Shown: positions 7,491 through 53,140, counted from the first letter of the stretch. The stretch: DNA of 64,000 bases from Polymyxa betae A26-41 (GCA_003693705.1 RBZT01000734.1:1-64000); one strand, 5' to 3'. The notes: generated from the sequence alone by a model not told the origin. Numbers and translations: made by a program.

Positions 7491-7999
7491 AGGTTATCTG
7501 TTTGTGTGCCCAGTGAACATAATATTCTGTATAGGCTGTGCCTCTTTAATATGTCAGTCATAATATTAAATTATAAGTGTTTGCCTGTACTTGAGTCAAG
7601 CATACATCTGTTAGCCAGCTTGCTTCGATCAGAGCAGACTCCTCCACGAAAGCGCCAATGGTATCTTAACTACTACTTATTATTTAAAAGCATTTCGACT
7701 TATGAAAAATTATGTAATAAAGCCAAGAGACAGTTTTTAAAAGGAATTAAATTTGTACTTAGCCCTAATTCAAACGTCGTTAAGAAGTGTTCTCTTCCCT
7801 AATTAAACGGTCAAACAAACAAGTTCTGTCATCCGTTAATGCCTCGACGTTAATCACCTCTGACAATATATGTGAAATTGAAGGCTTTAATTCCAATATG
7901 TATGACATTATATTGATCACCAGCAAGCTGGAAAGATTGCAAAATCTGAAAGAAATTTGCCTGCCAATATAGGGTCCCGCGCTAAGTCCAGGGAGACCA

Positions 8000-8021
8000 G
8001 GAGTCCGCGACGGAGTCCGTA
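8000..8021 (+). promoter_or_regulatory. Candidate promoter element, tandem GGAGTCCG, upstream of RPS14
   Basis: GGAGTCCGCGACGGAGTCCGTA; 9-11 nt pieces of it recur at similar distance upstream of RPL4, REXO and NOP53. Confidence 0.45.
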
Positions 8022-8063
8022 CGAGGTCGTCGTGATTTTGTTGATCTGAATTAACACGAGATC

Positions 8064-8498
8064 ATGTCGAAGGAGCAGGAGCCCACCTACTACGGCCCCA
8101 AGGTTCGTGAAGGCGAGCACGTGTTCGGCGTCGCCCACATCTACGCCTCGTTCAACGACACGTTCGTCCATGTCACCGATCTCAGCGGCAAAGAAACCAT
8201 CTGCCGAGTCACCGGTGGTATGAAGGTCAAGGCCGATCGTGATGAAGCCTCGCCATACGCCGCCATGTTGGCCGCCCAGGATGTCGCTGCCAAGTGCAAG
8301 GAGCGCGGCATCACCGCCATCCACGTCAAGCTCCGCGCTACCGGTGGAACCAGAACCAAGACGCCCGGCCCAGGCGCCCAGAGCGCTCTCCGAGCCCTGG
8401 CTCGTAATGGCTTGAAGATCGGCCGCCTCGAGGATGTCACTCCCATCCCCACCGACAGCACCCGCGCCAAGGGAGGTCGTCGTGGTCGCCGTTTGTAA
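8064..8498 (+). CDS. RPS14: 40S ribosomal protein S14 (uS11)
   Basis: [56 protein letters not shown]; intronless, strong C-ending codon bias. Confidence 0.99.
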
Positions 8499-9531: not shown

Positions 9532-14052
<4,521 letters not shown>

Positions 14053-39677: not shown

Positions 39678-40002
39678 GTTTCTTCTCTCATAAACTCTCT
39701 AGCTTTGATGAGCATTATTTTTCCTAAATCTTTTTCGATTCTGGCTCGCGTGTTTGTTTCTCAAAATGTGATATCTGTAACCAACCTCCATAACGAGACG
39801 TGACCTATCAGTAATTTTTTAATATTGTTTAAATTGAGATTCCGGATTAATAGTTGAACATTGATTGAATTCCCCATCTTAATCGTTCTTTGCAGATTAA
39901 AGATTTGATCCTTGCTGCAATTTCTGTATTGTTTTGCCAGATGTCATAGAAAGGTTTCTTTATAAATATTGTATATATGCTACTATTACTTGCAGATAAG
40001 GT

Positions 40003-43000
40003 TTAGACGACGGTATCGTCGCCATCATGATTGTCCTTTGATTTGCCGACAGCATCGGAACCTTTTTCTGAGCTGTCCTCCCATAAGGGAACAATTTTGT
40101 TCGACAATGCCTGAAGTAATGATGATTTCCGCTTGGGTCTCGTTCCTATCAATTCCCTATTTATGTTGTTATCTGAGCTTGCGGTAGGCGACGTGAGCGC
40201 ATCTGTCGACCCGTTTAGAGATTTCCTGGGTTTCAGCACATTAGGAAACAGTGGAGCTATTATGGGTTTCTCTTCTGTTTCAAAATCGGAGCTCGTCAGC
40301 TGCGATTCCTTCGGCCCTGCTTCATGTGGATCGTGTTGATTCGAATTACGACTACGTTGGTCGCACTCGTCAACTACATCTAAATTCGAGTGTTGGCCCT
40401 TGAATTTCTGGGCCTGTTTGGTCAGCTTTCGTGCCATTCCCGCCACCATAATCGTTGATTTCAGGCTTTTGGAGTCGCTTGAGTCCTTGTCCTAGATAGA
40501 AGTCATCGATGGAATATAAGGAAATTAGCTTGCTGACATCGCTATATTGCTTAGGGAATGGATCACCCTTAACACGAACAAAGTAAGTTGACTCGTTCGG
40601 TATTAATTGACGGCTCTTAGCGAATGCGAACCGAATCGTAGGCTTGTCTGGTTTTTGTAGCAATCGTTTCACATCGGACGAGCAATGTACAAGTTTCTCA
40701 GGACAGGAGAACGCCAGCTGTGCCGCGAGATCAACCTGAACAGGATTAGATATTCATTGAAAACAACAAATGAATCAACTAAGAATGCAACTATCGAAAA
40801 ATAAAAAAGGAGCACAAAAAGAAATGGAAAACTGGAACTTGTGAAACAGATATTTACTGTGATGCCATAAATGCTATGTCGAAGAGATGATCCAGGAAGA
40901 ACAGCAGACAGGACACCCCCAACCGCTACTCCACAAGCGACCGAAAGAATGCCATTGTCCAAGCCAAGCTCGTTCTCGACTTCGGAGCTAGCACGAGCCA
41001 ACTCCAATGCCGCCTGGAACAAATACTCAGAGCTAGCGTGACGAGCTCTGATGCAAATACCTGAACTGCATGGGTGACTCGTGTAATTGGTCCCTGACCA
41101 GGACCAGCTCCTGTTTCATTATCTGGGTCGGATTCGAACTCTTCTTGAGCATGACGGAAACCACAAACGAAAACGTACGATGATCCACCGCTGATTGCAT
41201 TTAGAAAAAGATATTCACAAAGTCACACAATTAACAGAACGATAGGGCAAACGAAGAAAAAAACAAGAAATGATTGGAAGAATGGTGTGAAGTATGAAAC
41301 TTATTATTTACCTCAATAGATTCATGCATGAATGCTGCTGACAGATAGAATTGAACCTTTCAAACAGCTTAGAGATGACCGTTACTGATTCATGTGGTGA
41401 CGATCGATAGCGATTCAGAAAGTCGGACAGGTGAGAGAACTCGATCTGCCCCACAGCGACATTATTGCAGAGCCAGCCTTGAGGTTCGAATGACATGTCA
41501 AGCTTGGCAGCAACAGGGCGCGGAACCAGGCGTGGTAGCAGTCGATGAACAGTACGACGATGCTGATTGCCGGCCCATTCCAGAAAGAACAAACGCCGAA
41601 CATTGACTTCTCGGTCGTAACAGACGATCAACTGGCCAGCTAGTACCAGAGAGAATAGGAGAGCGGCTATCATGGTCTCGGGGAACAGAATCTCGTTTAG
41701 AGCGAATGTATTGATGATAAAAACGACCATGAAGACCAGCCCTAAACCACCAAATTCAGATTGGCAAGAAATTTTAACTCAAGCTATGGTGTGATGGGTT
41801 ATAACGTTGGGACAAAAGACAAATCGGTTCTTGTAAGCAAATAGCCCATCGCTCAAGATGTCGGTGAGTCAAAAGATTCGTACCAATCAGCAAAGAGTCT
41901 GTGTACGCCAGGGCCTGATTCTGTAATGTTGCGGTCACGAACACGATCGCAAGGCAAGTTGTGGACGGATTCGGGACTAAATCGTGGTTTCGCGATGTCA
42001 GCATTGCCTGGATTCCAAAAGTCTGCGACAGGTGAGTTAAAATGATAAAACAATTCTCTGACTAACATTGATTGCTTGTAAGCCCAGCCGGAACAGTAAC
42101 AAAGCTGCAGTACAGTGATGCTGCTCAAGAAAATGATTGAGCCGGCCACTCCAGATCGGCGACTGTATCAGAAAGCTAAGCGCTGAAGAGATGATTAAGT
42201 ACAAAACCACAACAGCGAATCCAGCAGGGTCAAATTGGATTAGAATGAGGTTAAGCAGCTCCCAGACCCCAGCCATGATTGCCTGTCGCGAAGTCAGCAT
42301 CATTGATTATGCCATGAGCACCGAATTACTGGATCGTAACCACGGGTCAGGTTCTGGAGAAGTTTATGCTCTCGAAAGCGTTGGTAGTCGCGCTCGAGCT
42401 CTTCCCTTAGTCGAGTTCAAAAACTGAAAACGTAGATTGCATCTCTTATCGCTAAACTACAAATTTTCAAAAGACACAACTCCACAGATTAAACAAGCGA
42501 AACCTGCGCTTGATAAACACAAATACGAATTAGCTCAAAAGCAACAAAACTACTGACCATGGCACCGATAACCCAGATGTCGTCTGCAGTTCTGCAATAT
42601 CAAACTTTAAAGTACGCGTAAGCGGAACAAGTAATTCAGCAAGATGAGCCTAACAGCGATTAGCCCCGGCCTGATTTGCATCAACTGTAAAACTAACGTC
42701 TTGCTGCTCAACACGGATTCGCCCGCCCAGATGTCTCACATAACTTTTAGCATTGGTGATACGTTCAAGATCATCTCGTTCTTGTTTGATTGAGTTGGTG
42801 AGGTGGTAGAACTGATTACCGTGAAATGATGAGATCTGCAACAATGAGCGATTAGAAGTATTTTCTAAATCCCTCTCGCCTATTGGATGTCAGGATCAGA
42901 GGGCAGTTTAACAAGGGACATTACTTGTCGTGAGAAGGTAAACGTCATTGGAGTTGAGGAATGGAATGGTCGGATCGGAAACATGACAAAGTTTGTTCTT

Positions 43001-46000
43001 TGCGCGAAGGCAATTGCCGAAGTCGAGCGCCTGCTGTACTGTCATGGCCAATCCGGCATCTAGCATGAACGTGACTGCTTCAGATCCCAAGAAAGTTCCC
43101 GAATACTGCCTTCCTATAGAACGATTAGCGCTATGCTCCGAGGGCAAACAGTAGAAAGGTTCCAATCCGATTCAAAAGATGCAATTTGAGAACTAAACCT
43201 GGATTGATGATAATCCCAAAAAAGATAACACATTAGCGGAATCACTTTCGGCAGACCTCGAAATACTCTCGCTTTCAGATCGAGATTGCGGTGTAACCCC
43301 AGAGCTAGAGCATTTATATCAATGCGGTCGGCGGCGCTGAACCGGTACAGGTCGTTGTTATAGGCAAAATTGCGGCATAGACCGAACTCGTTTTGGAGAG
43401 CTGATTTCAGCACAAGATATTGACCGATCTGGATCGCATATTCACGGCTGTCTGTGACATTTTTGGCTAGCAAACAGTCCACAACGTTGATGGCAGTGAA
43501 CGTTTCCGGGTAAGATCGAAATCGGTGTTGGTTCGTCGTGGGATGGAGATTCTTCTTCAGTATATTTATCACATAAGGGACGTCAACATCACGTGAAATC
43601 CGCCACCGGTACAATTCGTCAGGTTCATCGAGAAACTCACGTCCTGATGTCACTGCATGCACAATAACATTACGCATTATTAGAGCATTCGCGATCTTAA
43701 CGCCATCGAATCGGCTCACTACGGTTTGTGATGACATCAACAGGTCAACCACTTCGCTTCCAGAGAAGCAGTTTGGGATTGTGCGAAATAATTGTTTTCG
43801 ATGTTGAACCTGCAGTTTGGACCGGAGTAAGGCTGTAATCGATGAAAACGAATCTACTTGTTCCTGCTGTAATGCAGTTTTTTCTTTATCGCTTGTCATA
43901 GAAGATTTCGACTGCGAGATGGACGTTTTTCGTTTCAGAGTACCCTCGTTCTTCGTCGAAGACGCAATAGGCTCAGCGTGGTACAAATGTCGAACAAGTT
44001 CATACGTGGCCCTTCCGATACAGACTTGGCCTTGATCTGCCAGAGTTTGTGCAATTCGGGCACCATCAATAGCTTCTCCAACAACAGTTGTATAGATCCG
44101 GGGCGGAACGATGTCATCATCTGCGACATCCCAATATGGAATCGGGCCGTGCACTAGCCGTCCTGTGTCAATTCCAATCGAAAGCGTCAACATAACACCG
44201 AACAGCAGCTGTGAAGTACGCGGGTCGCTGAGTTCAGCCAGCCGAATCGCAATGCGGCACATCTCAAGGGCGGAGTCACATTCTGGAGCGGAACCTGGCC
44301 CAATATAGGCCATGAGCAGGGCGCCATGTCCAGATGCTACACAGGAAATTTGCATGTCAGGGCGCGCTGCTGTCCGCCTCAGCGTTGTGGTGATGGTTTC
44401 ATGAATTTTTGACAGTAGGGAGACTGATTGGGCCGGTGATCGATGCTGGATTAGGTTCCCAAGCGAATCGATACCAACGACCAGGCAGGTTGCAGATGAT
44501 GACGACCGACTCGGAACGGAACCCAGAGCGGTATTAACGTAAGATCGAAACGAGGCAATTGACATGCATTGGTCAATTATGCCCAACTTTTCGCTGCGCG
44601 TATTTGAACTGATTTCCGCATTCGGTAACATGTCATCACAAACGGAGCACGATAGTACGAACAAGACACGATACCGACGACATTGAAGAAAATAGAGCCG
44701 ACGTCGACGCTCATCCAAATAGCACTGATATGCAGAAACTACAGCCAGAGAGATGTAAGCGCTGTTCAGCAGGACAATTTCGAGCGGCTGCGGACGAGCA
44801 AATAACGAGGGTGGCAGAGCGAAACAAACATTCATTAATACCAAGTCCCAAATAACTATGACTATGGCATCAGTAAAGTAGAATCGAATTGACGTCAGAA
44901 TCGCATATGGGAAAGCAACAGCGCCGAGCAATGGCATCAAATCCGGTCGAGACATCAGTTCGTTAGCTCTAATGTCAGCACGTCGTGCAAGATCACCGGG
45001 TGTCGGCCATAAAGTCAGGCATTTCAATGCGCTCAATAAAATGCATAGCAAGAAAATGCACTGGCGGGTGGAATCTGGACGGAATCGATCAAGAACCACG
45101 ATTAACAGCGAAAGCCAGGTAATAACAAAAACAGAGCGTGGAGTGCCCCAGGACTGAGCCAGCTCGACCTGGATTAGCGAGTATGCCAACAGAATAATGC
45201 CAACAATTCCTAATCGGAGACGAAGAGAAACCCAATGATTCTTTTCAGAAATATATCGGAACGAACGTTCACGTTCTTCGCATTCGGAGTAGGCACGGCG
45301 CACCTGACCGCTATCCATGTCGGATGATAACGCCGGTGTAAAGCGTAACGTCACAACAGACATGGTAACGGCATAGGATGACAGTTTTTGGTTGTGCTCT
45401 TGTCGAAAATTTGGAATTTTGATCGAAGAACTAAGACTGTCTTTATGTTCTGATGAATACCTGGATGACGACTTCGACATAGAAGGCATACGAAAAAGCA
45501 TAAATGACACTCGCGGCAACATTTTCTGAGATTCCGTCATCGGTGTTGACGCTGTTGTCTGCTGAGCCGAAAAAGAAGAGCGCGACCGCATCACTGAAAG
45601 ACGGCGAACCGATATTCCATCCGGTGTCTGCTCAACAATTGCCGAAGTGTCCGATGGTAACTTCGGCAAAGATTTCGAAAGCGATACCGATCGCGAGCGC
45701 TGTTTGATAACCTCAGGGTCCGCATTCCCAACCTGAGCGGGTTGTAATGAGGTGAGTTTTTTCCAAACATCGCCATTTAGCAGTGCAAACGTGCCATTGA
45801 AGCGATCAGCTTTGGCGCCTGCAACAATCAGCACCTGCTCGACGAAAGGAATTAGCCGTATCCGCAATGTTGTGTACATATCAGAGAATGTAACAGATGC
45901 TGTAATTGCTTTCGACAACAGAAGTTCTGTGCGTGCCTTCTTAACGTAATGCTCGAGGGCCTGTACATTCTCAGCCAGAGTCGGCGATGACAGATAGCGA

Positions 46001-49000
46001 ACGCGACGCAGAGTCATATCTAATACCACAGCGCTGAATGCGATTAGAGCGATGATAAGCGCAAATCGAAACAGGGAAATGCCGTTGTCGACGTCGGGAG
46101 CTAAGGTTGTGTCAATTGCGGAACCGACTTGCACCCAGAAATATGATGCCAGCAGCGAAACCATTGAGAGAAAAATGACGTTCAAGGACGGTGTAGACAT
46201 AGCAGCGATGATTTTTAACACAGCGGTGGCACAGACGACGAAAAACACTAAAATCCCGGAGCTGTACAAGCTCCCAACGTTGTTGTTGTCAACAGCCGAG
46301 GTTGCAACCGAGCTCGTACCTGAGCGAAACCCGAGACTTGCCCATGCATTGATCGATGCCATAGTAAGAAAGAAAACAGCCACACCGTGTACAATTCCGT
46401 TCAGCATGGCACGAAGCGTATGCCCAAGGCCGAATCCGCCGCGACGAGCCCCATTGTGAAAGTACACACGCGGGTCGTTCTCCGCAATGTCATCGCTAAC
46501 ATCTTTATCGCTGATTCCGGTGACAAGGATCGGCAAGAGAGTCAGACCCAAGTCAAACATATCACTGAGAACGGCAGGAACGAAAACAACGGCTGAAAAT
46601 CCATTGAAACAACCATGTAGAAACTGTATCGTTGGGAGCAACATAGTCTTGTAGATTGAGAGCGAAGCGACCTAAGGAGAGAGTTAGTGCTCAAATTGGA
46701 TCAAAGGATATTACACTCAAGAACGTTTCGTTTCATAACATTGAATTGGAGAAATGCAAGAATAACTATTCTAACACTCAAGAAGAGCATTGCGGAAATA
46801 GAGGAAACGATAAGCATCCAAAAAACAAATTTAATAATTTGCTGAACCTGACATAGACGATGATACTGCCAATGGCCATGGACGAGAATTAAGCGAGCAA
46901 GCGTCACAAATTTGGGCATTGAGTAATCGCTGCAAAGGACTGCTTCATTGGCATGCGTCAACGAAACATTTCCAATAGCCACACCAACATGAGCGGCCGC
47001 CATCTGAACGATGTCGCTGGATCCTCGAGCCACAGCCAGAGTCACGATTTCGTCCCGTAGCCCTTCGATGAGGCTATACCAAATAACACACAATGCCCCA
47101 GCCAATAGCCTTCGCAGGATGCTCCAGTGTCGATCTCCAGCTCGGAGCTCACGCCAAGATTCTTTAACCGTATGTCGAGCCTGATCGAGCGGTAAATGCC
47201 GGCCGCGGGTACGAACGAAACGCACAGCGCGAGCTTTGTCGTCTGGTGAACACTGGGCCAGTACGACTGTGTCGGCGACAGCACAGAGGCGAAACAAAAT
47301 ATCAGACATGACAGCATCGCCTGCAATTAGATTGAAAGCGACGGCGTCCAGAGTCAGGGCCATAGGGTTGTCAAGCGCCTGGTTCAAGTACCGCGCATGG
47401 TAATCAAACAATTCCACGCGAAGACGACAGCATGCGGCTTCAAGTTCGGCGTCGACCTACACAGAGGCAACATCAGCATCGGCACCAATCTTAGATCAAT
47501 AGGAATGAAGAGACAAATAGGGAATGGAGTGAACAGGAAATGTAAAGACCAATGTCATGTGGAACACCCGACCTGTTCGGGGGTTGGCTGCGCCGCTGCC
47601 CGTTCAGCCTGAGCACGCTCATAGATCTGATCGAGGGTTGGTGGGGTGAGCCTGGGGTCAACATCGGGGTCGGGCCCTATGGAATCGCCCATATGGAATT
47701 CATTAATAAGCTTCTTGGTGACCTTGGTCGGTGCCAGAGCAGGCGATGACAATAATTGCACCTGGATCATCGCTGGGGTGATGAGTTTCGAGCGGTAAGC
47801 AGTGGCACGAGCTGCTGCTAGCGATTCCGAAGTTGACATCCAGAATTTGATACCGCTGACTTGCATACGCTCTATCATGGTTGGGACGGCGCTATCAACG
47901 ACATCCTCGAAGGCAATCAGACCAACAAACCGCAGTTTAGTCTCAATTTGGTCGGCTAGGAACTGAAGCGTGGCCGTCTGTGGCGTCAGATCCGGGGCCA
48001 ATAACATTTCTCTGGTGATTGGATCGTGATCGGTCCAGTTTATATGGTTGGGATCAAGATTCCGAGCTCGGTAATAAAGCGGCAACCAGATGTTATGGAA
48101 ATAGGTCAGCGGGATTCGACGTTCGGCAATGATCATGGCGCGAAAGCCAGTACGCCCATACCTACAATGGATGGTTTAAATCAGCGGAATACGGTTCTAA
48201 AGAGATTTAGATCACCGGTCCAGGGCGCCGAATACGTCGAATTTCTGCCGGTGTACATCGATGCAACGGTCAATCATGTCACGAGCCCAGCCTTTGCAGT
48301 ACAAAATCATATCGGAACCAGAACGCTTGACGACCACAGACATGCGTCCTCGGCTTGACATAGGATTGATGGCGACGATGTCGACATCTTCCATTACCTT
48401 CTTATGACGTAAGGCTGGCGGCGGCTTCACTGCAACCCGGAGAATTGGACCCTCCCGCGACTTGAACTCCCAACCGAATGCTTTGGCAGCTTCGACCATG
48501 GCAACCTCAAAAGGTGATGATGAACGATACTCAAACGCCTTGTTGAAGAATTTATCGTCGCGTTTGATTGTCGTCTCCAGATGGCGCTGTTCTTTTGCCA
48601 ATTTGATCCGCGAAGTAATCGAATTGCAGCATGCCATAATGGTTGCAACGAGACGGATACGCTTTTGTCGGTCGGCATCATCCTCATTCCACAGGTCCTG
48701 AATGACAGCAGGGCCCTCAGCATCATATTCAATTCCATCACAGTTGATTGTCGCCACTCGAATTGTGCCGGTGGACAATAGACCAAGCTTCTCAGTGAAC
48801 ACGTACTCGACCTGCCCGAGGTCGGCGTTAACATTGCTGGTCATCATGGCAGGCTTATTAAGTAGATTGCTGGTCTGCTCCCAGAGCTTTTTGTCGGAGG
48901 ATACTGAGACGCCTTGCGAAGTCATACAAAGCTCCAATGTAATCCATATCGATATCGATCCAATGGTGCTATACAGAAAGAAGAAATAGGTCCACGATAT

Positions 49001-50566
49001 CAACAAATCAGACGGGTCGCTCAAATACATGTGCCAAAATTGAGTCAGATCAACGTGTCCGGATAGCCCGAGGTCCTGTACGACGATTTCTGAAGCCACC
49101 AGACTCGTTCCTCGCGCGAATAAGCTGTTGCCGGTGGCGCTGAAAAGAGCAAACAGCAGTCGCACACCGAGAATCAAGGCCATGGCCCAATCCAGCTGTT
49201 TCATGAGATGTGATCGTTTCGGTTGGCGACTGGCGCTGCGCCAATTCTTGACGACTTTGCAATCATGCCCGGCGTAAACGACGACGCCGATGGCAGCGCC
49301 GGTGTATGCCAGCCGGGTCCCTCGCATGGCCAAGTTCGATAACGACAGCCTGGCAACGTGCGAGTAGCCGGTGCTGGCTGAATCGTTGCCGAGTTCCTCT
49401 TGCAAAATGCGCTGGACTTTGGGATGCTGTTCGAGCGGCATACCTTTGCAGCGCTCAATCTCCTCGCGCTGCATTTGCGCAGCTGCCTCTCGGATGTCGA
49501 CGCCGAAAATGCCATCGAATGAGGTCAAAGACCGATTCGGCTTATCACACAACAATGCTCCTATGAAGGACATTTAGATTATTCATCCAGGCAACCCCTA
49601 AGCCCTGAGAAAAAATGGCCATAATTAAACAGCAAATGATGCTGAAACAACCTTTAACTCGGCGAAGACATGTTCCTGTTTTGAAGATAGAGGTGACTTC
49701 GACGGCAGTTTTCAGTGACAGATTGGTATCACCGTCCACATTGGACGAATCGATGAAACATTCGCCGTCACATTGACCCTCCAGTGGATCGGTTGCCAGC
49801 AAGACCATATCGGCCGGAAAGCGCTCGCCATTCTTCACCTGAACGATATCGCCGACGACGATATCGCCCCAGGCCATGGATACGAAACTGCTCTTGGTGG
49901 CAACTGCTCGGAGCTGGTTCGGGTCCAGGACCAGACTACGTTTGACATTTTCTTGGGCGTCAGCTCGGGCTCGTTTTAGATCCTCGCTATATTCTTTCAG
50001 CATTCGGATTGCAATCCATAGTGCGAACTCGTAGCGTAGTGGCATGAAGGAGCTCTCATACGAATTTGTATAGACCTGATGACATGGTAAGAAGCTCTGG
50101 AATTAAAAGAGTTTGAAAAGTGCGGCAAATTTTGCACATGGGAGACATCGGATAGAATAACGCAAATAGCAGAGTGGTTTGATGAGTTAAAAGGGGGAGT
50201 GAAACGTAATGCGGCTTAGTTGTGTGACAGAGAGAGAGAGAGAGAGAGAAATTCAATGCTATTCATATTACATTGACGATGATTAGTGCGAGGAAGACCA
50301 GGTTGATGGGCAGCTGAATCTGCTCCCAGAGGCATCGGGGCACGAACGTTGCCAGCGTGTACTTAGCCGTCTGCATCGTGTTCCGCGCGTACCTAAATCA
50401 GCATCTGTTTCAGCTGCCGCTGATGTAGTTTGATTTCGGAATCCCACCCAGCCGCCCCGTTCCGTAGGCGATCATCCAGCATGACGAGACGCCTCTTTTT
50501 CGGATCGTTCGGTTGGGCCAACACTGACTCGTCGAATTTTGGCTTCCGCCGAGCGTTTAGCACCAT
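40003..50566 (-). CDS. P4-ATPase-like / transmembrane nucleotide (guanylyl)-cyclase-like fusion protein with three DEP domains; catalytic motifs degenerate (multi-exon, ~3000 aa)
   Basis: P4 signatures: NTMQTAKYTLATFVPRCLWEQ, WGDIVVGDIVQV..FPADMVLL, LGQVEYVF, SSSPFEVAMVEAA, RMSVVV..LYCKG, LILVHGHWQY. The single 1176-aa ORF 43114..46644 joins the ATPase C-terminal helices to a TM block, a cyclase-fold domain (LSIGIDTG..GQVCIGRATYELV) and DEP domains. A second TM block and cyclase-fold domain follow (VACGVAVGGVLSAVLPG..IYGITVDLAAQL). Confidence 0.85.
50229..50248. repeat. (AG)10 microsatellite inside a ~196-nt intron of the fusion gene
   Basis: Direct reading of the sequence. Confidence 0.9.
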
Positions 50567-51150: not shown

Positions 51151-53140
51151 TTATATAGATAAGCTGAAGCATTGCGGAGACAGTTTGCGGCTGGCAATTT
51201 CGAGCTCTAATGAGACGTTGTAAGAGCGAGGGGATGATGCGGGTCGAGAAGCGTGCAGTTGGCCAATCACGACCTGGTCGCATTCCAGAGCAATCGGCTG
51301 AGCCAGCATGAAGATTGTCTGCTTCCAATGTGTGTATGGCTGGTCGGGAGCCGTAGTCAGTCGTACTGGTTCACTGCAAGCAGCAGCGAAATCAACATTG
51401 AAATACGACACAATCGCATCAAGTGTCTCGTTACGCATCGCCTAAATCCGCTATTAAACACTTCGAGTCTTTAAGCGGCTCTTGACAGAGCTAGCAACAT
51501 ACGCGAATGGTGAACGTCGACGAGAAATCAAGGTCGGCGTCGGTGGTGCGTCCGATGTCAATCTGCTTGATGAGGGCAGAATCTGTAAAGATAGCGTCCG
51601 AAGGAAGCGTCGCGACCCAGGCCCGGCCTGAATTGCGGCAATTTTCCAACGTCTGGTCGACTTCGCCAATGTCGCTCATATCGAATCTGACCCGGATTGT
51701 TTAGCAACTTGTTGATACGCAGACGAAAGGGCCAAAAAATGAAAGAGATTGGTACCCGTAGAGATCTTTCCAGAAACCAAGATTACGACTTGCGAAGGAC
51801 CTGGTCTGAGCGCCGGCTACGAACAGAGCTGCCTGATCCGGATATACAAAAGCCGGGTCAACCAGAAATTTATCGCGAGCAACCAGGACAGATGACAGCA
51901 TGGATTCGAACCTGTACGGCATGAGAACAGCATTACCGATGACGACGCTACATACAGAAGAAAGTAGCCCATCCATTCCGAGATGATCAGGTCCACTTTG
52001 CAATCCAGCTCGATCGCTTCGACTTTGCCCTGGATGATCTCCACAATATTGCTGTAGCCATTCCGGGCGACAGCCAAGCGAGCCTTGTGCACGATCTCGG
52101 CGTTGTCAATGCCGATCACACGCCGGGCTCCGGCTCGAGCTGCGAACAGGCACAGGATCCCGGATCCGCATCCCACGTCCACTACGACCTAACCGCTCAT
52201 TGACTCAAACCTTGACATCATGACTGAAATCATACTTTGTTCTCGAATAGATGTCGATTGCGGTCGCAAAAGGACTGATATGCCCGGGTTCGGGCTGTAT
52301 CTCTCAGCATTTCTTCATGGATATCAACACAACTGTATCCACTGAAATACGCCTGATCTTTCTCAGCGATTTCGCTAACCTAAACAGGATTCAGCCTTGA
52401 GACGGAAGCAGATTTCTACGAATGAGAAAAAAATACAACTATCTCGAAAATGGGCATGGGTGCATGGGCAGAGAAGTAGAAAGAAACAAAGATAAAACAT
52501 CAAGTAACATTACAATTTGTTGTTGACTAGAAGCGACATTGCCGTCTTTGTTATCGTCATCGTTCAAGCCAAGGGCATTTTTGAAGGTATCCTTCATTTT
52601 CTGAATCTATTCGATGACACTAAATTTCGGTTCGGCGGCTAGCCGGTTATCAGCCCGACCTCTGCCCTCAAAGCCTCGTTTTCCGTTTGCAGATCGGCAA
52701 CGTCATCGTCGCTGTCATCGCCGTCGGACGAATCGTCGTCGAGCGAGAACAGCAACGGATCATTTTCAATAACGGGCTTCAGGTATTGTTCGTGATTCCA
52801 AGGACGAGTATCGCTCGAGATCTGCTCAATTATCGCACTTGCTCTGCAGCCTTGCGCAGCACTGGCCCGGATATAGTTCACTAATTTGACGACATCGTAG
52901 AAATCCAGTTCTGATCATGATGGTTTAACAATCAGCTGAGAAGCGATCTGAAACACACGTACGATGTTGGCGCCGAAACTCTCGCAAATCGAATCGATGC
53001 TGTTCGGCGTCGTACCGAAGGCATTCGTTGACCGACGGCAGCGTCGTCTCCCGGTCAAATAACGATGTGCAAGGGTCGTTGGGCAGCAGCGATTCGGTGT
53101 CGCTCAGGTCGTCGTCGCTGCTTCGATTCCCGCACAACAT
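51151..53140 (-). CDS. PRMT3: Protein arginine methyltransferase 3 (multi-exon; start approximate)
   Basis: N-terminal PRMT3-type region (SLFD..HRFDL..LDFYDVVKLVNYIR; YLKPVIENDPLL); IHEEMLRD..RT; VDVGCGSGIL; ISEWMGYFLLFESML; THWKQT. Confidence 0.9.

What the first reader, a model, noticed from the sequence alone, without database searches (positions are those of the whole stretch)
42930..43815. Three tandem DEP domains inserted in the linker between the cyclase halves
Three ~70-aa repeats fit the DEP pattern. (1) RKQLFRTIPNCFSGSEVVDLL..SRFDGVKIANALIMRNVIVHAV..FLDEPDELYRW at ~43815-43600. (2) HRFRSYPETFTAINVVDCLL..SREYAIQIGQYLV..FAYNNDLYRF at ~43550-43340. (3) RVFRG|RQYSGTFLGSEAVTFML..TVQQALDFGNCLRAKNKLCHV..FLNSNDVYLL, split by an intron at ~43255-43114. 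DEP domains are established GPCR- and acidic-lipid-binding modules (Dishevelled, Sst2/RGS, Epac). This position corresponds to the regulatory C1b region of transmembrane cyclases, suggesting direct receptor or lipid coupling.
Basis: partly seen in the sequence, partly recalled or inferred. Interest (0 to 1): 0.8.

Follow-up and report, generated by a model that had tools for sequence, protein, structure and literature searches.

The report
Three DEP domains inside a pseudo-cyclase
A large membrane protein of a root-parasitic protist (most likely Polymyxa betae) joins a lipid-flippase-like half to a two-part cyclase-like half, both apparently without catalytic residues, and has three conserved, folded DEP docking domains where related enzymes have only a floppy linker.

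Summary
Three DEP domains (PF00610) lie at 43815-43603, 43536-43339 and 43317-43257 + 43113-42938 on the minus strand. Spliced transcript contigs from three studies remove the 143-nt GT..AG intron (43256-43114) in frame.

AlphaFold models (pLDDT 89-91) show the canonical DEP fold. The best structural matches are the tandem DEP domains of DEPTOR and P-Rex1.

The array fills the C1b position. Upstream is a diverged cyclase-homology domain (only cyclases hit in the PDB, E=2e-4). Downstream are a conserved segment, a TM block and a second cyclase-like domain.

Order and copy number are kept in two relatives (about 70-84% and 37-53% identity), with dN/dS about 0.1.

The flippase motifs and the cyclase metal, Asn and Arg positions are substituted, and the substitutions are conserved. 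The protein therefore looks like an old pseudo-enzyme scaffold with the DEP array as its likely docking or output module.

Assembly statistics match the Polymyxa betae draft genome. That places the gene in Rhizaria, where a 2026 survey found no flippase-cyclase chimeras and describes C1b as disordered.

Lipid or receptor coupling is untested. The scan noted this same stretch in an overlapping window of the same genome, not on other DNA.

The parts
45985..50045 (-). P4-ATPase (flippase)-like module in several exons. Its C-terminal TM part lies in the same uninterrupted exon as C1 and DEP1-2.
   Evidence: Pfam: PhoLip_ATPase_C 73.5 bits, E1-E2_ATPase 26.5 bits (below its cut-off of 28.1), Cation_ATPase 25.7 bits. 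Motifs are substituted: EKLGL for DKTGT at 48793-48776, DGDT for DGET at 49736-49725, ARGSSD for GDGxND near 46988. The substitutions are the same or similar in L001/L003.
44848..45213 (-). First TM block of the cyclase-like part
   Evidence: Hydropathy analysis finds four segments above threshold at residues 478-599 of the 1129-aa exon. The block is collinear in L002 and L003.
43963..44511 (-). C1, a diverged class III cyclase-homology domain
   Evidence: Pfam Guanylate_cyc 18.1 bits, E=0.0022, below the cut-off of 21.9. A profile of four orthologues hits only nucleotide cyclase catalytic domains in the PDB, best 6ao9 at E=2e-4. The ESM feature search returns Guanylate_cyc clusters only, at scores of 0.84-0.88, which is a lead only.
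43816..43962 (-). Ser/Thr/Lys-rich linker between C1 and DEP1
   Evidence: Read from the translation. It is poorly conserved in the relatives.
43603..43815 (-). DEP1
   Evidence: PF00610 64.3 bits, E=9.5e-18. AF2 model pLDDT above 90 with DEP topology. Best PDB sequence match is DEPTOR DEP1, E=1.9e-8.
43339..43536 (-). DEP2
   Evidence: PF00610 31.7 bits, E=1.4e-7. AF2 shows DEP topology. PDB sequence match to DEPTOR, E=5.7e-4.
43257..43317 (-). DEP3, first helix, at the end of the large exon
   Evidence: Helix 182-199 of the AF2 model. It aligns with helix 1 of DEP3 in the contiguous orthologue P0006.
43114..43256 (-). Intron inside DEP3 (143 nt, GT..AG, phase 1, splits a Gly codon)
   Evidence: Skipped in contigs of runs X3, X4 and X8, which come from three studies. 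Same position and phase in L002, absent in L001/L003.
42938..43113 (-). DEP3, remainder (hairpin strand 2 to the last strand)
   Evidence: PF00610 33.2 bits, E=5e-8 on the exon alone. Identity is 84% to L002 and 50% to L001/L003. The orthologue's DEP3 folds as DEP at pLDDT 91.
42880..42924 (-). 45-nt intron after the DEP3 exon
   Evidence: This corrects my first guess of a longer intron ending at 42836.
42330..42879 (-). Conserved post-DEP segment in three short exons (42879-42698, 42649-42558, 42405-42330)
   Evidence: Exon borders, frames. Conserved in L002 and, for the first exon, in L001/L003. No Pfam family.
41620..42282 (-). Second TM block
   Evidence: Hydrophobic segments in exons 42282-42067 and 41741-41312. 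Conserved in L002 and L003.
40538..41500 (-). C2, the second cyclase-like domain, in four exons
   Evidence: Sub-threshold Pfam Guanylate_cyc hits at consistent profile positions (11-52 and 79-132). Collinear with the orthologues. Motif-level alignment with the genome's own cyclases.
40003..40491 (-). Last exon: low-complexity C-terminal tail and the stop codon

Best explanation
Shown:
- The gene at about 40003-50045 (minus strand) encodes one polytopic protein. Its order is a P4-ATPase-like module, a TM block, cyclase-homology domain C1, three DEP domains, a conserved segment, a second TM block and cyclase-like domain C2.
- The three DEP domains are real and folded.
- They are expressed as part of one spliced mRNA.
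- They are conserved in order and number in related species, under purifying selection as strong as on the cyclase-like domains.
- They replace what is a disordered C1b linker in described flippase-cyclase chimeras (P4GC) and in animal membrane cyclases.

Inferred:
- The phospho-Asp of the flippase, and the metal-binding Asp pair and the Asn of the Asn/Arg pair of the cyclase halves (Arg survives in C1 here and in C2 of the distant orthologue), are substituted, and the substitutions are themselves conserved. The protein is therefore most likely a non-catalytic scaffold or sensor.
- In that scaffold the cytosolic tri-DEP array would be the membrane-proximal docking module. It would bind either a membrane partner or the inner leaflet, or dock back on the pseudo-cyclase dimer. 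Signal output would then go through protein contacts, not through cGMP or cAMP.
- The organism is most likely Polymyxa betae (Plasmodiophorida, Rhizaria).
For: DEP identity:
- Pfam scores.
- AF2 pLDDT 89.2 with the topology helix, beta-hairpin, helix, helix, two strands, seen twice.
- Foldseek top hits are the DEPTOR tandem DEP (E=1.7e-12), P-Rex1, RGS7/9, pleckstrin, Dvl2-Fzd4, Epac2 and LYCHOS.
- The orthologue's DEP2-DEP3 give the same result.

One mRNA:
- Contigs of 4.5-4.9 kb in three studies run from upstream of C1 through all the DEP exons to the 3' end, with 11 GT..AG introns removed.
- Exon phases are consistent down to the stop codon.

Conservation:
- Matches are collinear in L002 and L001/L003. 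Identities are DEP1 63-70% / 42-53%, DEP2 68-70% / 37.5%, DEP3 84% / 50%, C1 79% / 44-49%.
- dN/dS is about 0.09-0.12 for the DEP units and for C1.
- A fourth lineage (L005) has a DEP1-like start directly after C1.

Cyclase fold of C1.

Degenerate catalysis:
- Alignment with the genome's own cyclases, which keep FADVSGFT, AGDALL and GDVVNLSARLM.
- Flippase motifs.

DEP is rare in this genome: 4 detectable domains, 3 of them in this gene.

Organism: 1001 contigs and 27,085,814 bases, against 1,001 contigs, 27,085,946 bp and 45.1% GC for P. betae (PMC6328671).

C1b is described as an intrinsically disordered, variable loop in 121 aligned P4GCs (PMC13466520).
Against: - No binding, lipid or activity data exist.
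- The 'dead enzyme' call rests on alignments of very diverged domains. The first Asp position of C1 is ambiguous by two residues, and C2 could only be examined exon by exon.
- The DEP units are not markedly basic, which does not favour strong non-specific binding to acidic lipids.
- The transcript contigs I laid cover only 40000-45900. Continuity with the upstream ATPase exons rests on the single open exon 46644-43257, on the collinear orthologues, and on the cDNA-like fragment P0004.
- The naming of the organism rests on assembly statistics only.
Confidence: 0.6

Rival explanations
1. Lipid coupling. The DEP array binds acidic inner-leaflet lipids such as phosphatidic acid, PS or phosphoinositides. 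It would report the lipid state sensed or set by the flippase-like module to the cyclase-like dimer.
For: The DEP domains of Dishevelled, Epac, DEPTOR and P-Rex1 bind acidic lipids or membranes (established knowledge). Their structures are the top fold matches. The array sits next to the membrane, between two TM blocks, in a protein with a lipid-transporter-like half.
Against: Net charge of the units is only +2, +3 and -1. The flippase motifs needed for transport are substituted. No lipid assay exists.
Confidence: 0.3
2. Receptor or partner coupling. The DEP array docks a separate membrane protein (a 7TM receptor tail or a SNARE-like anchor) or a G-protein regulator, as in Dishevelled-Frizzled, Sst2-Ste2 and RGS7-GPR158/R7BP.
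For: Fold matches include the Fzd4/DEP and GPR158/RGS7 complexes. Among the nearest DEP relatives in other protists, DEP arrays are fused to a 7tm_3 receptor (P0027), a ROCO kinase (P0038) and a RapGAP (P0150).
Against: No partner is identified. DEP is otherwise nearly absent from this genome, so there is no obvious DEP-based network. By sequence, Dvl2 is a weaker match than DEPTOR or P-Rex.
Confidence: 0.3
3. Intramolecular regulation or clustering. The DEP units pack on the pseudo-cyclase dimer, in the way P-Rex1 DEP1 autoinhibits its DH domain. Alternatively they self-associate by domain swapping, as the Dishevelled DEP does, and cluster the protein.
For: P-Rex1 autoinhibited structures and domain-swapped Dvl2 DEP dimers are among the matches. 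A pTM of 0.65-0.67 suggests a partly defined packing of neighbouring units.
Against: The tandem arrangement superposes poorly on DEPTOR and P-Rex (rmsd 9-15 A over the pair). No full-length model was made, because the spliced protein was not joined.
Confidence: 0.2
4. Artefact. The DEP exons belong to a neighbouring gene, to a mis-assembly of the binned draft genome, or to a decaying pseudogene.
For: The assembly is a binned draft from infected roots. L002 shows frame shifts within DEP1.
Against: Spliced contigs from three independent studies join C1, the DEP exons and C2. The same order is found in three other assemblies. dN/dS is about 0.1. DEP1 and DEP2 lie in the same uninterrupted exon as C1 and the ATPase C-terminus.
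Confidence: 0.02

Closest known systems
P4-ATPase-guanylate cyclase chimeras (P4GC: Toxoplasma GC, Plasmodium GC alpha/beta, ciliate and oomycete homologues)
   Same: Same overall order in one polypeptide: an N-terminal P4-ATPase-like module, then two (TM block + class III cyclase-homology domain) units joined by a C1b segment (PMC13466520).
   Different: [quoted passage not shown] Here C1b is three folded DEP domains.
- The cyclase domains here score below Pfam's cut-off and lack the catalytic Asp pair and the catalytic Asn.
- DKTGT reads EKLGL.
- The host is apparently a rhizarian, a group where that survey found none.
Tandem DEP domains of DEPTOR and P-Rex1/2
   Same: They are the best structural matches (E=1.7e-12 and 1.6e-11) and the best sequence matches (E=1.9e-8 for DEP1). 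Both DEP units align across the pair.
   Different: - There are three units here, not two.
- The relative orientation of neighbouring units does not superpose (rmsd 9-15 A).
- The array is embedded between TM blocks of a polytopic protein, not in a soluble mTOR inhibitor or a Rac-GEF.
- Identity is only 15-22%.
LYCHOS/GPR155 and GPCR-DEP fusions of protists (for example P0027, 7tm_3 + 4 DEP)
   Same: DEP domains are covalently attached to a polytopic, transporter-like or receptor-like membrane protein.
   Different: In those proteins DEP is C-terminal and single, or forms a C-terminal array. Here the array is internal, between two membrane-anchored halves.
C1b region of animal transmembrane adenylyl cyclases
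   Same: Same position between C1a and the second TM block. It is a known regulatory site in those enzymes (established knowledge).
   Different: The animal C1b is short and mostly unstructured, and it regulates an active enzyme. Here it is about 300 residues of folded domains in a protein without the canonical catalytic residues.
Epac and other cNMP-binding + DEP proteins
   Same: DEP is associated with cyclic-nucleotide signalling. The only other DEP detected in this genome lies beside cNMP-binding domains on contig C818.
   Different: No cNMP-binding domain was found in this gene. DEP lies next to the would-be synthase, not the sensor.

Membership tests
DEP domain (Pfam PF00610) | Profile match at or above the gathering score (32.7 bits) | tested here: met
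   DEP1 scores 64.3 bits. The DEP3 exon scores 33.2 bits (34.2 in the genome scan). DEP2 scores 31.7 bits alone (E=1.4e-7), just under the cut-off, but counts as the second stretch of a 90.3-bit hit.
DEP domain (Pfam PF00610) | Fold: helix 1, beta-hairpin arm, helices 2-3, two short C-terminal strands (winged-helix type) | tested here: met
   AF2 models at pLDDT 89.2 (window DEP1-2) and 91.1 (orthologue DEP2-3) show this topology in every unit. Foldseek hits with E<=1e-3 are DEP proteins. The window's own DEP3 was not folded, because the two exons were not joined. It is 50% identical to the folded orthologue unit.
DEP domain (Pfam PF00610) | Binding to membranes, 7TM receptors or membrane anchors | not testable with these tools
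   Needs lipid-binding and pull-down assays.
P4-ATPase-guanylate cyclase chimera (P4GC) | P4-ATPase module and cyclase module in one polypeptide | tested here: met
   PhoLip_ATPase_C (73.5 bits), C1 and DEP1-2 lie in one open exon, 46644-43257. The orthologue loci have PhoLip_ATPase_N, PhoLip_ATPase_C, C1, DEP and C2 in the same order.
P4-ATPase-guanylate cyclase chimera (P4GC) | Two class III cyclase-homology domains, each after a TM block | tested here: inconclusive
   C1 hits only cyclases in the PDB with a family profile (E=2e-4), but its Pfam score is 18.1 against a cut-off of 21.9. The C2 exons give only 13-14 bits and no PDB hit, although their order and motifs fit.
P4-ATPase-guanylate cyclase chimera (P4GC) | Conserved catalytic residues of the cyclase (two metal-binding Asp in one half, Asn/Arg in the other) | tested here: not met
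   No Asp at the 'GD' position of either half. The first Asp is ambiguous in C1 and absent in C2. Asn is replaced by Asp in both halves. Arg is kept in C1 and is Gln in C2. The same genome's other cyclases keep all of these.
P4-ATPase-guanylate cyclase chimera (P4GC) | Disordered, variable C1b linker | tested here: not met
   Three folded, conserved DEP domains occupy C1b, in contrast to PMC13466520.
P4 ATPase (flippase) | DKTGT phosphorylation motif, DGET and GDGxND | tested here: not met
   EKLGL, DGDT and ARGSSD in the window. EKNGL, DGDC and ARSAND in L001/L003.
Tandem-DEP module of the DEPTOR / P-Rex type | Two DEP units packed in the same relative orientation | tested here: inconclusive
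   Both units align, but rmsd is 9-15 A and TM is about 0.4 over the pair. The inter-domain geometry of the models is of uncertain reliability.

The most novel reading that the evidence does not exclude
The flippase-cyclase fusion is older than currently thought. It would be present in Rhizaria as well as in alveolates and stramenopiles. In plasmodiophorids it would have been converted into a non-catalytic membrane receptor or scaffold that signals through a tri-DEP array instead of through cGMP. That would be a pseudo-enzyme version of the P4GC architecture, with a new output module.
Probability: 0.35. Interest if true: 0.75.

Novelty: new variant of a known kind. Interest (0 to 1): 0.62.

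Why it matters
How the flippase half and the cyclase half of P4GC proteins communicate is unresolved. These proteins are essential in Toxoplasma and Plasmodium.

This natural variant keeps the whole architecture under purifying selection, but it has apparently lost both catalytic centres and gained a folded DEP array. That argues the architecture has a function beyond catalysis, and it offers a defined, soluble handle (3xDEP) with which to look for partners or lipids.

If the organism is Polymyxa betae, as the assembly statistics indicate, the gene also bears on a 2026 conclusion. That survey reported that rhizarians have no such chimera and no membrane-type cyclase, and that the fusion arose after rhizarians diverged.

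The protein belongs to plasmodiophorids, obligate root parasites and virus vectors of crops whose signalling is poorly known.

Tried and rejected
- My first guess for the intron after DEP3 (42924..42836) was wrong. Transcript contigs show a 45-nt intron, 42924..42880.
- I considered Blastocystis because of the very short introns. I rejected it because the genome is 27 Mb and has at least 5 cyclase loci, 38 cNMP-binding matches and about 8 PDE loci.
- The 18S rRNA scan of the genome gave only a 44-bit fragment, useless for naming the organism.
- A search of papers for the run and assembly accessions of the orthologue contigs found nothing.
- The RNA run X24 had no reads on the stretch, so it was no test.
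- The search for homologous proteins on the DEP region (candidates of 620-1975 aa) returned nothing. That is a blank of no weight. It means I could not sample DEP + cyclase architectures elsewhere.
- A PDB profile search with the first C2 exon found nothing.
- Supplementary tables of the P4GC survey are not held, so I could not check its sequences for DEP.
- I computed an identity figure for the DEP3 intron between the window and L002, but I do not regard it as informative.
- The spliced protein was never joined. Exons were searched one by one by reference, and DEP3 was assessed from its exon and from the naturally contiguous orthologue fragment P0006.


Full report
**Observation**

On the minus strand, the stretch 43860-43258 translates without a stop. 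It lies in a 1176-codon ORF (46644-43114) whose coding part, 46644-43257, is a single exon.

Pfam finds DEP (PF00610) twice in this stretch (90.3 bits together, E=7.5e-26) and once more in the next exon, 43111-42926 (33.2 bits, E=5e-8, profile 13-70 of 72).

Scored singly:
- DEP1 (43815-43603): 64.3 bits.
- DEP2 (43536-43339): 31.7 bits, a hair under the gathering score of 32.7, at E=1.4e-7.

A six-frame scan of the whole genome recovers the same three places.

**Splice**

Contigs of runs X3, X4 and X8 come from three different studies. They are not labelled RNA, but they lack 11 intervals that all have GT..AG ends on the minus strand. All three skip 143 nt, 43256..43114, which splits a Gly codon (G|GA).

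The same contigs show that the next intron is only 45 nt (42924..42880), not the longer one I first assumed. They define all exons down to the stop at 40005-40003. Exon lengths and phases are mutually consistent.

Every exon was searched by reference. DEP3 was judged from its exon and from a naturally contiguous orthologue.

**Fold**

An AlphaFold2 model of 43860-43258, built with 37 aligned tandem-DEP sequences, has mean pLDDT 89.2. It shows the DEP topology twice: helix, beta-hairpin arm, two helices, two short strands. It then shows the first helix of DEP3.

Foldseek against the PDB gives the DEPTOR tandem DEP (E=1.7e-12) and P-Rex1 (E=1.6e-11). These are followed by RGS7/9, pleckstrin, Dishevelled (including the Frizzled-4 complex), Epac2 and LYCHOS/GPR155.

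The orthologue fragment P0006 reads through DEP2 and DEP3 without an intron. Its model has pLDDT 91.1 and gives the same matches.

By sequence, DEP1 and DEP2 are nearest to DEPTOR and P-Rex DEP domains. The DEP3 exon is weak in pairwise search.

**Surroundings**

Upstream in the same exon lie:
- the C-terminal TM part of a P4-ATPase (PhoLip_ATPase_C, 73.5 bits);
- a TM block;
- a domain that Pfam scores as Guanylate_cyc at only 18.1 bits.

A profile of this domain from four orthologues hits nothing but class III nucleotide cyclase catalytic domains in the PDB, best E=2e-4. C1 is therefore a real but diverged cyclase-homology domain.

Downstream of DEP3 come three short conserved exons, a second TM block, and four exons with sub-threshold Guanylate_cyc matches at consistent profile positions.

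Further upstream, other exons carry the E1-E2 and Cation_ATPase signatures.

**Relatives**

An exhaustive phmmer search of 1.84 billion representative proteins found only a handful of orthologue fragments. Their contigs show the same order of parts:
- L002: 48% GC, 63-84% identity.
- L001/L003: about 65% GC, 37-53% identity. The order there is PhoLip_ATPase_N, PhoLip_ATPase_C, C1, DEP x3, conserved segment, TM block, C2.

DEP3 is the best conserved unit (84% and 50%).

The DEP3 intron is at the same position and phase in L002 and is absent in L001/L003. In L001/L003 the two halves of DEP1 lie in different frames about 44 nt apart, which suggests a short intron inside DEP1.

A fourth, more distant contig (L005) has a DEP1-like start directly after C1.

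dN/dS against L002 is about 0.09-0.12 for the DEP units and 0.10 for C1. dS is near saturation, so these values are approximate.

**Catalytic residues**

The genome's other cyclases (soluble-AC type, on contigs C941, C467 and C355) keep the textbook motifs.

Aligned with them, this gene differs as follows:
- C1 has no Asp at the 'GD' position.
- C1 reads GEAIDGAR where the controls read GDVVNLSAR, so Asn is replaced by Asp and Arg is kept.
- The position of the first Asp in C1 is ambiguous by two residues.
- The C2 exons have Gln or Gly and Ser at the two Asp positions.
- C2 has Asp and Gln in place of Asn and Arg.

The flippase motifs read EKLGL, DGDT and ARGSSD. The distant orthologue has EKNGL, DGDC and ARSAND.

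The losses are therefore old and stably kept. This is the signature of a pseudo-enzyme, not of decay. It agrees with notes by other first-stage readers, which I checked in part.

**Genome context**

The genome has a full cyclic-nucleotide toolkit: at least 5 other cyclase loci, 38 cNMP-binding matches and about 8 PDE loci.

None of the other cyclase loci shares a contig with a P4-ATPase locus. This gene therefore appears to be the only flippase-cyclase fusion in the genome.

DEP is rare: four detectable domains, three of them here.

**Organism**

G000 has 1001 contigs and 27,085,814 bases. The Polymyxa betae draft genome is described as 1,001 contigs, 27,085,946 bp and 45.1% GC (PMC6328671).

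I take the organism to be P. betae, a plasmodiophorid in Rhizaria. The GC contents quoted in that paper for Plasmodiophora brassicae (58.5%) and Spongospora (45.7%) fit L001/L003 and L002. I did not verify those two assignments.

**Comparison with what is known**

A 2026 survey of 177 P4GC genes reports the following (PMC13466520):
- The family occurs in alveolates, oomycetes and bicosoecids only.
- tblastn of P. brassicae found no P4GC and no membrane-type cyclase in rhizarians.
- C1b is a variable, intrinsically disordered loop.

No paper in the library links DEP to a P4-ATPase-cyclase, or to plasmodiophorid cyclases.

The gene has the P4GC architecture but fails the catalytic and C1b features. 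I file it as a new variant, not as a plain member.

**Mechanism**

Identity, placement, expression and conservation of the three DEP domains are shown. Their ligand is not.

The most economical reading is a non-catalytic membrane scaffold whose DEP array is the docking or output module. Lipid binding, partner or receptor binding, and intramolecular docking remain open rivals. The modest net charge of the units (+2, +3, -1) slightly disfavours non-specific binding to acidic lipids.

Noticed in passing
G000 contig C818:136500-141500 (locus L009): The only other DEP match in the genome lies just downstream of cNMP-binding matches and a block of channel-like TM helices on the same strand. This may be a cyclic-nucleotide-gated-channel-like gene with C-terminal DEP, possibly two DEP units.
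   Followed up: partly
G000 contig C132:6500-13500 (locus L011): A P4-ATPase (LTGDK motif, PhoLip_ATPase_C at 7570-8377) lies about 2 kb upstream of a PDEase_I domain (10455-11132) on the same strand. This could be a flippase-phosphodiesterase fusion, or just two neighbouring genes.
   Followed up: partly
G000 contig C941:190412-196416 (part in locus L006): A soluble-type adenylyl cyclase with two intact catalytic domains and a long STAND-like tail lies about 4 kb from a strong PDE match (272 bits) on the same strand.
   Followed up: no
window 51151-52182 (minus strand): The upstream neighbour looks like a protein arginine methyltransferase (SAM-binding motif VLDVGCGSGIL-like). It marks the 5' limit of the flippase-cyclase gene.
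   Followed up: no
window 40000-45900: Intron lengths in this gene fall into two classes, 44-48 nt (six introns) and 121-152 nt (five introns), with nothing in between.
   Followed up: no
L002:1379-1575: The closer relative's contig shows two compensating frame changes inside DEP1/DEP2, and stop codons in the C2 exon region. These are probably assembly errors of a metagenome contig and not gene decay.
   Followed up: no
proteins P0027, P0038, P0150: In other protists, arrays of 3-7 DEP domains are fused to a family-C 7TM receptor, a ROCO (LRR-COR-kinase) protein and a RapGAP. DEP arrays seem to be a common add-on to signalling proteins there.
   Followed up: partly
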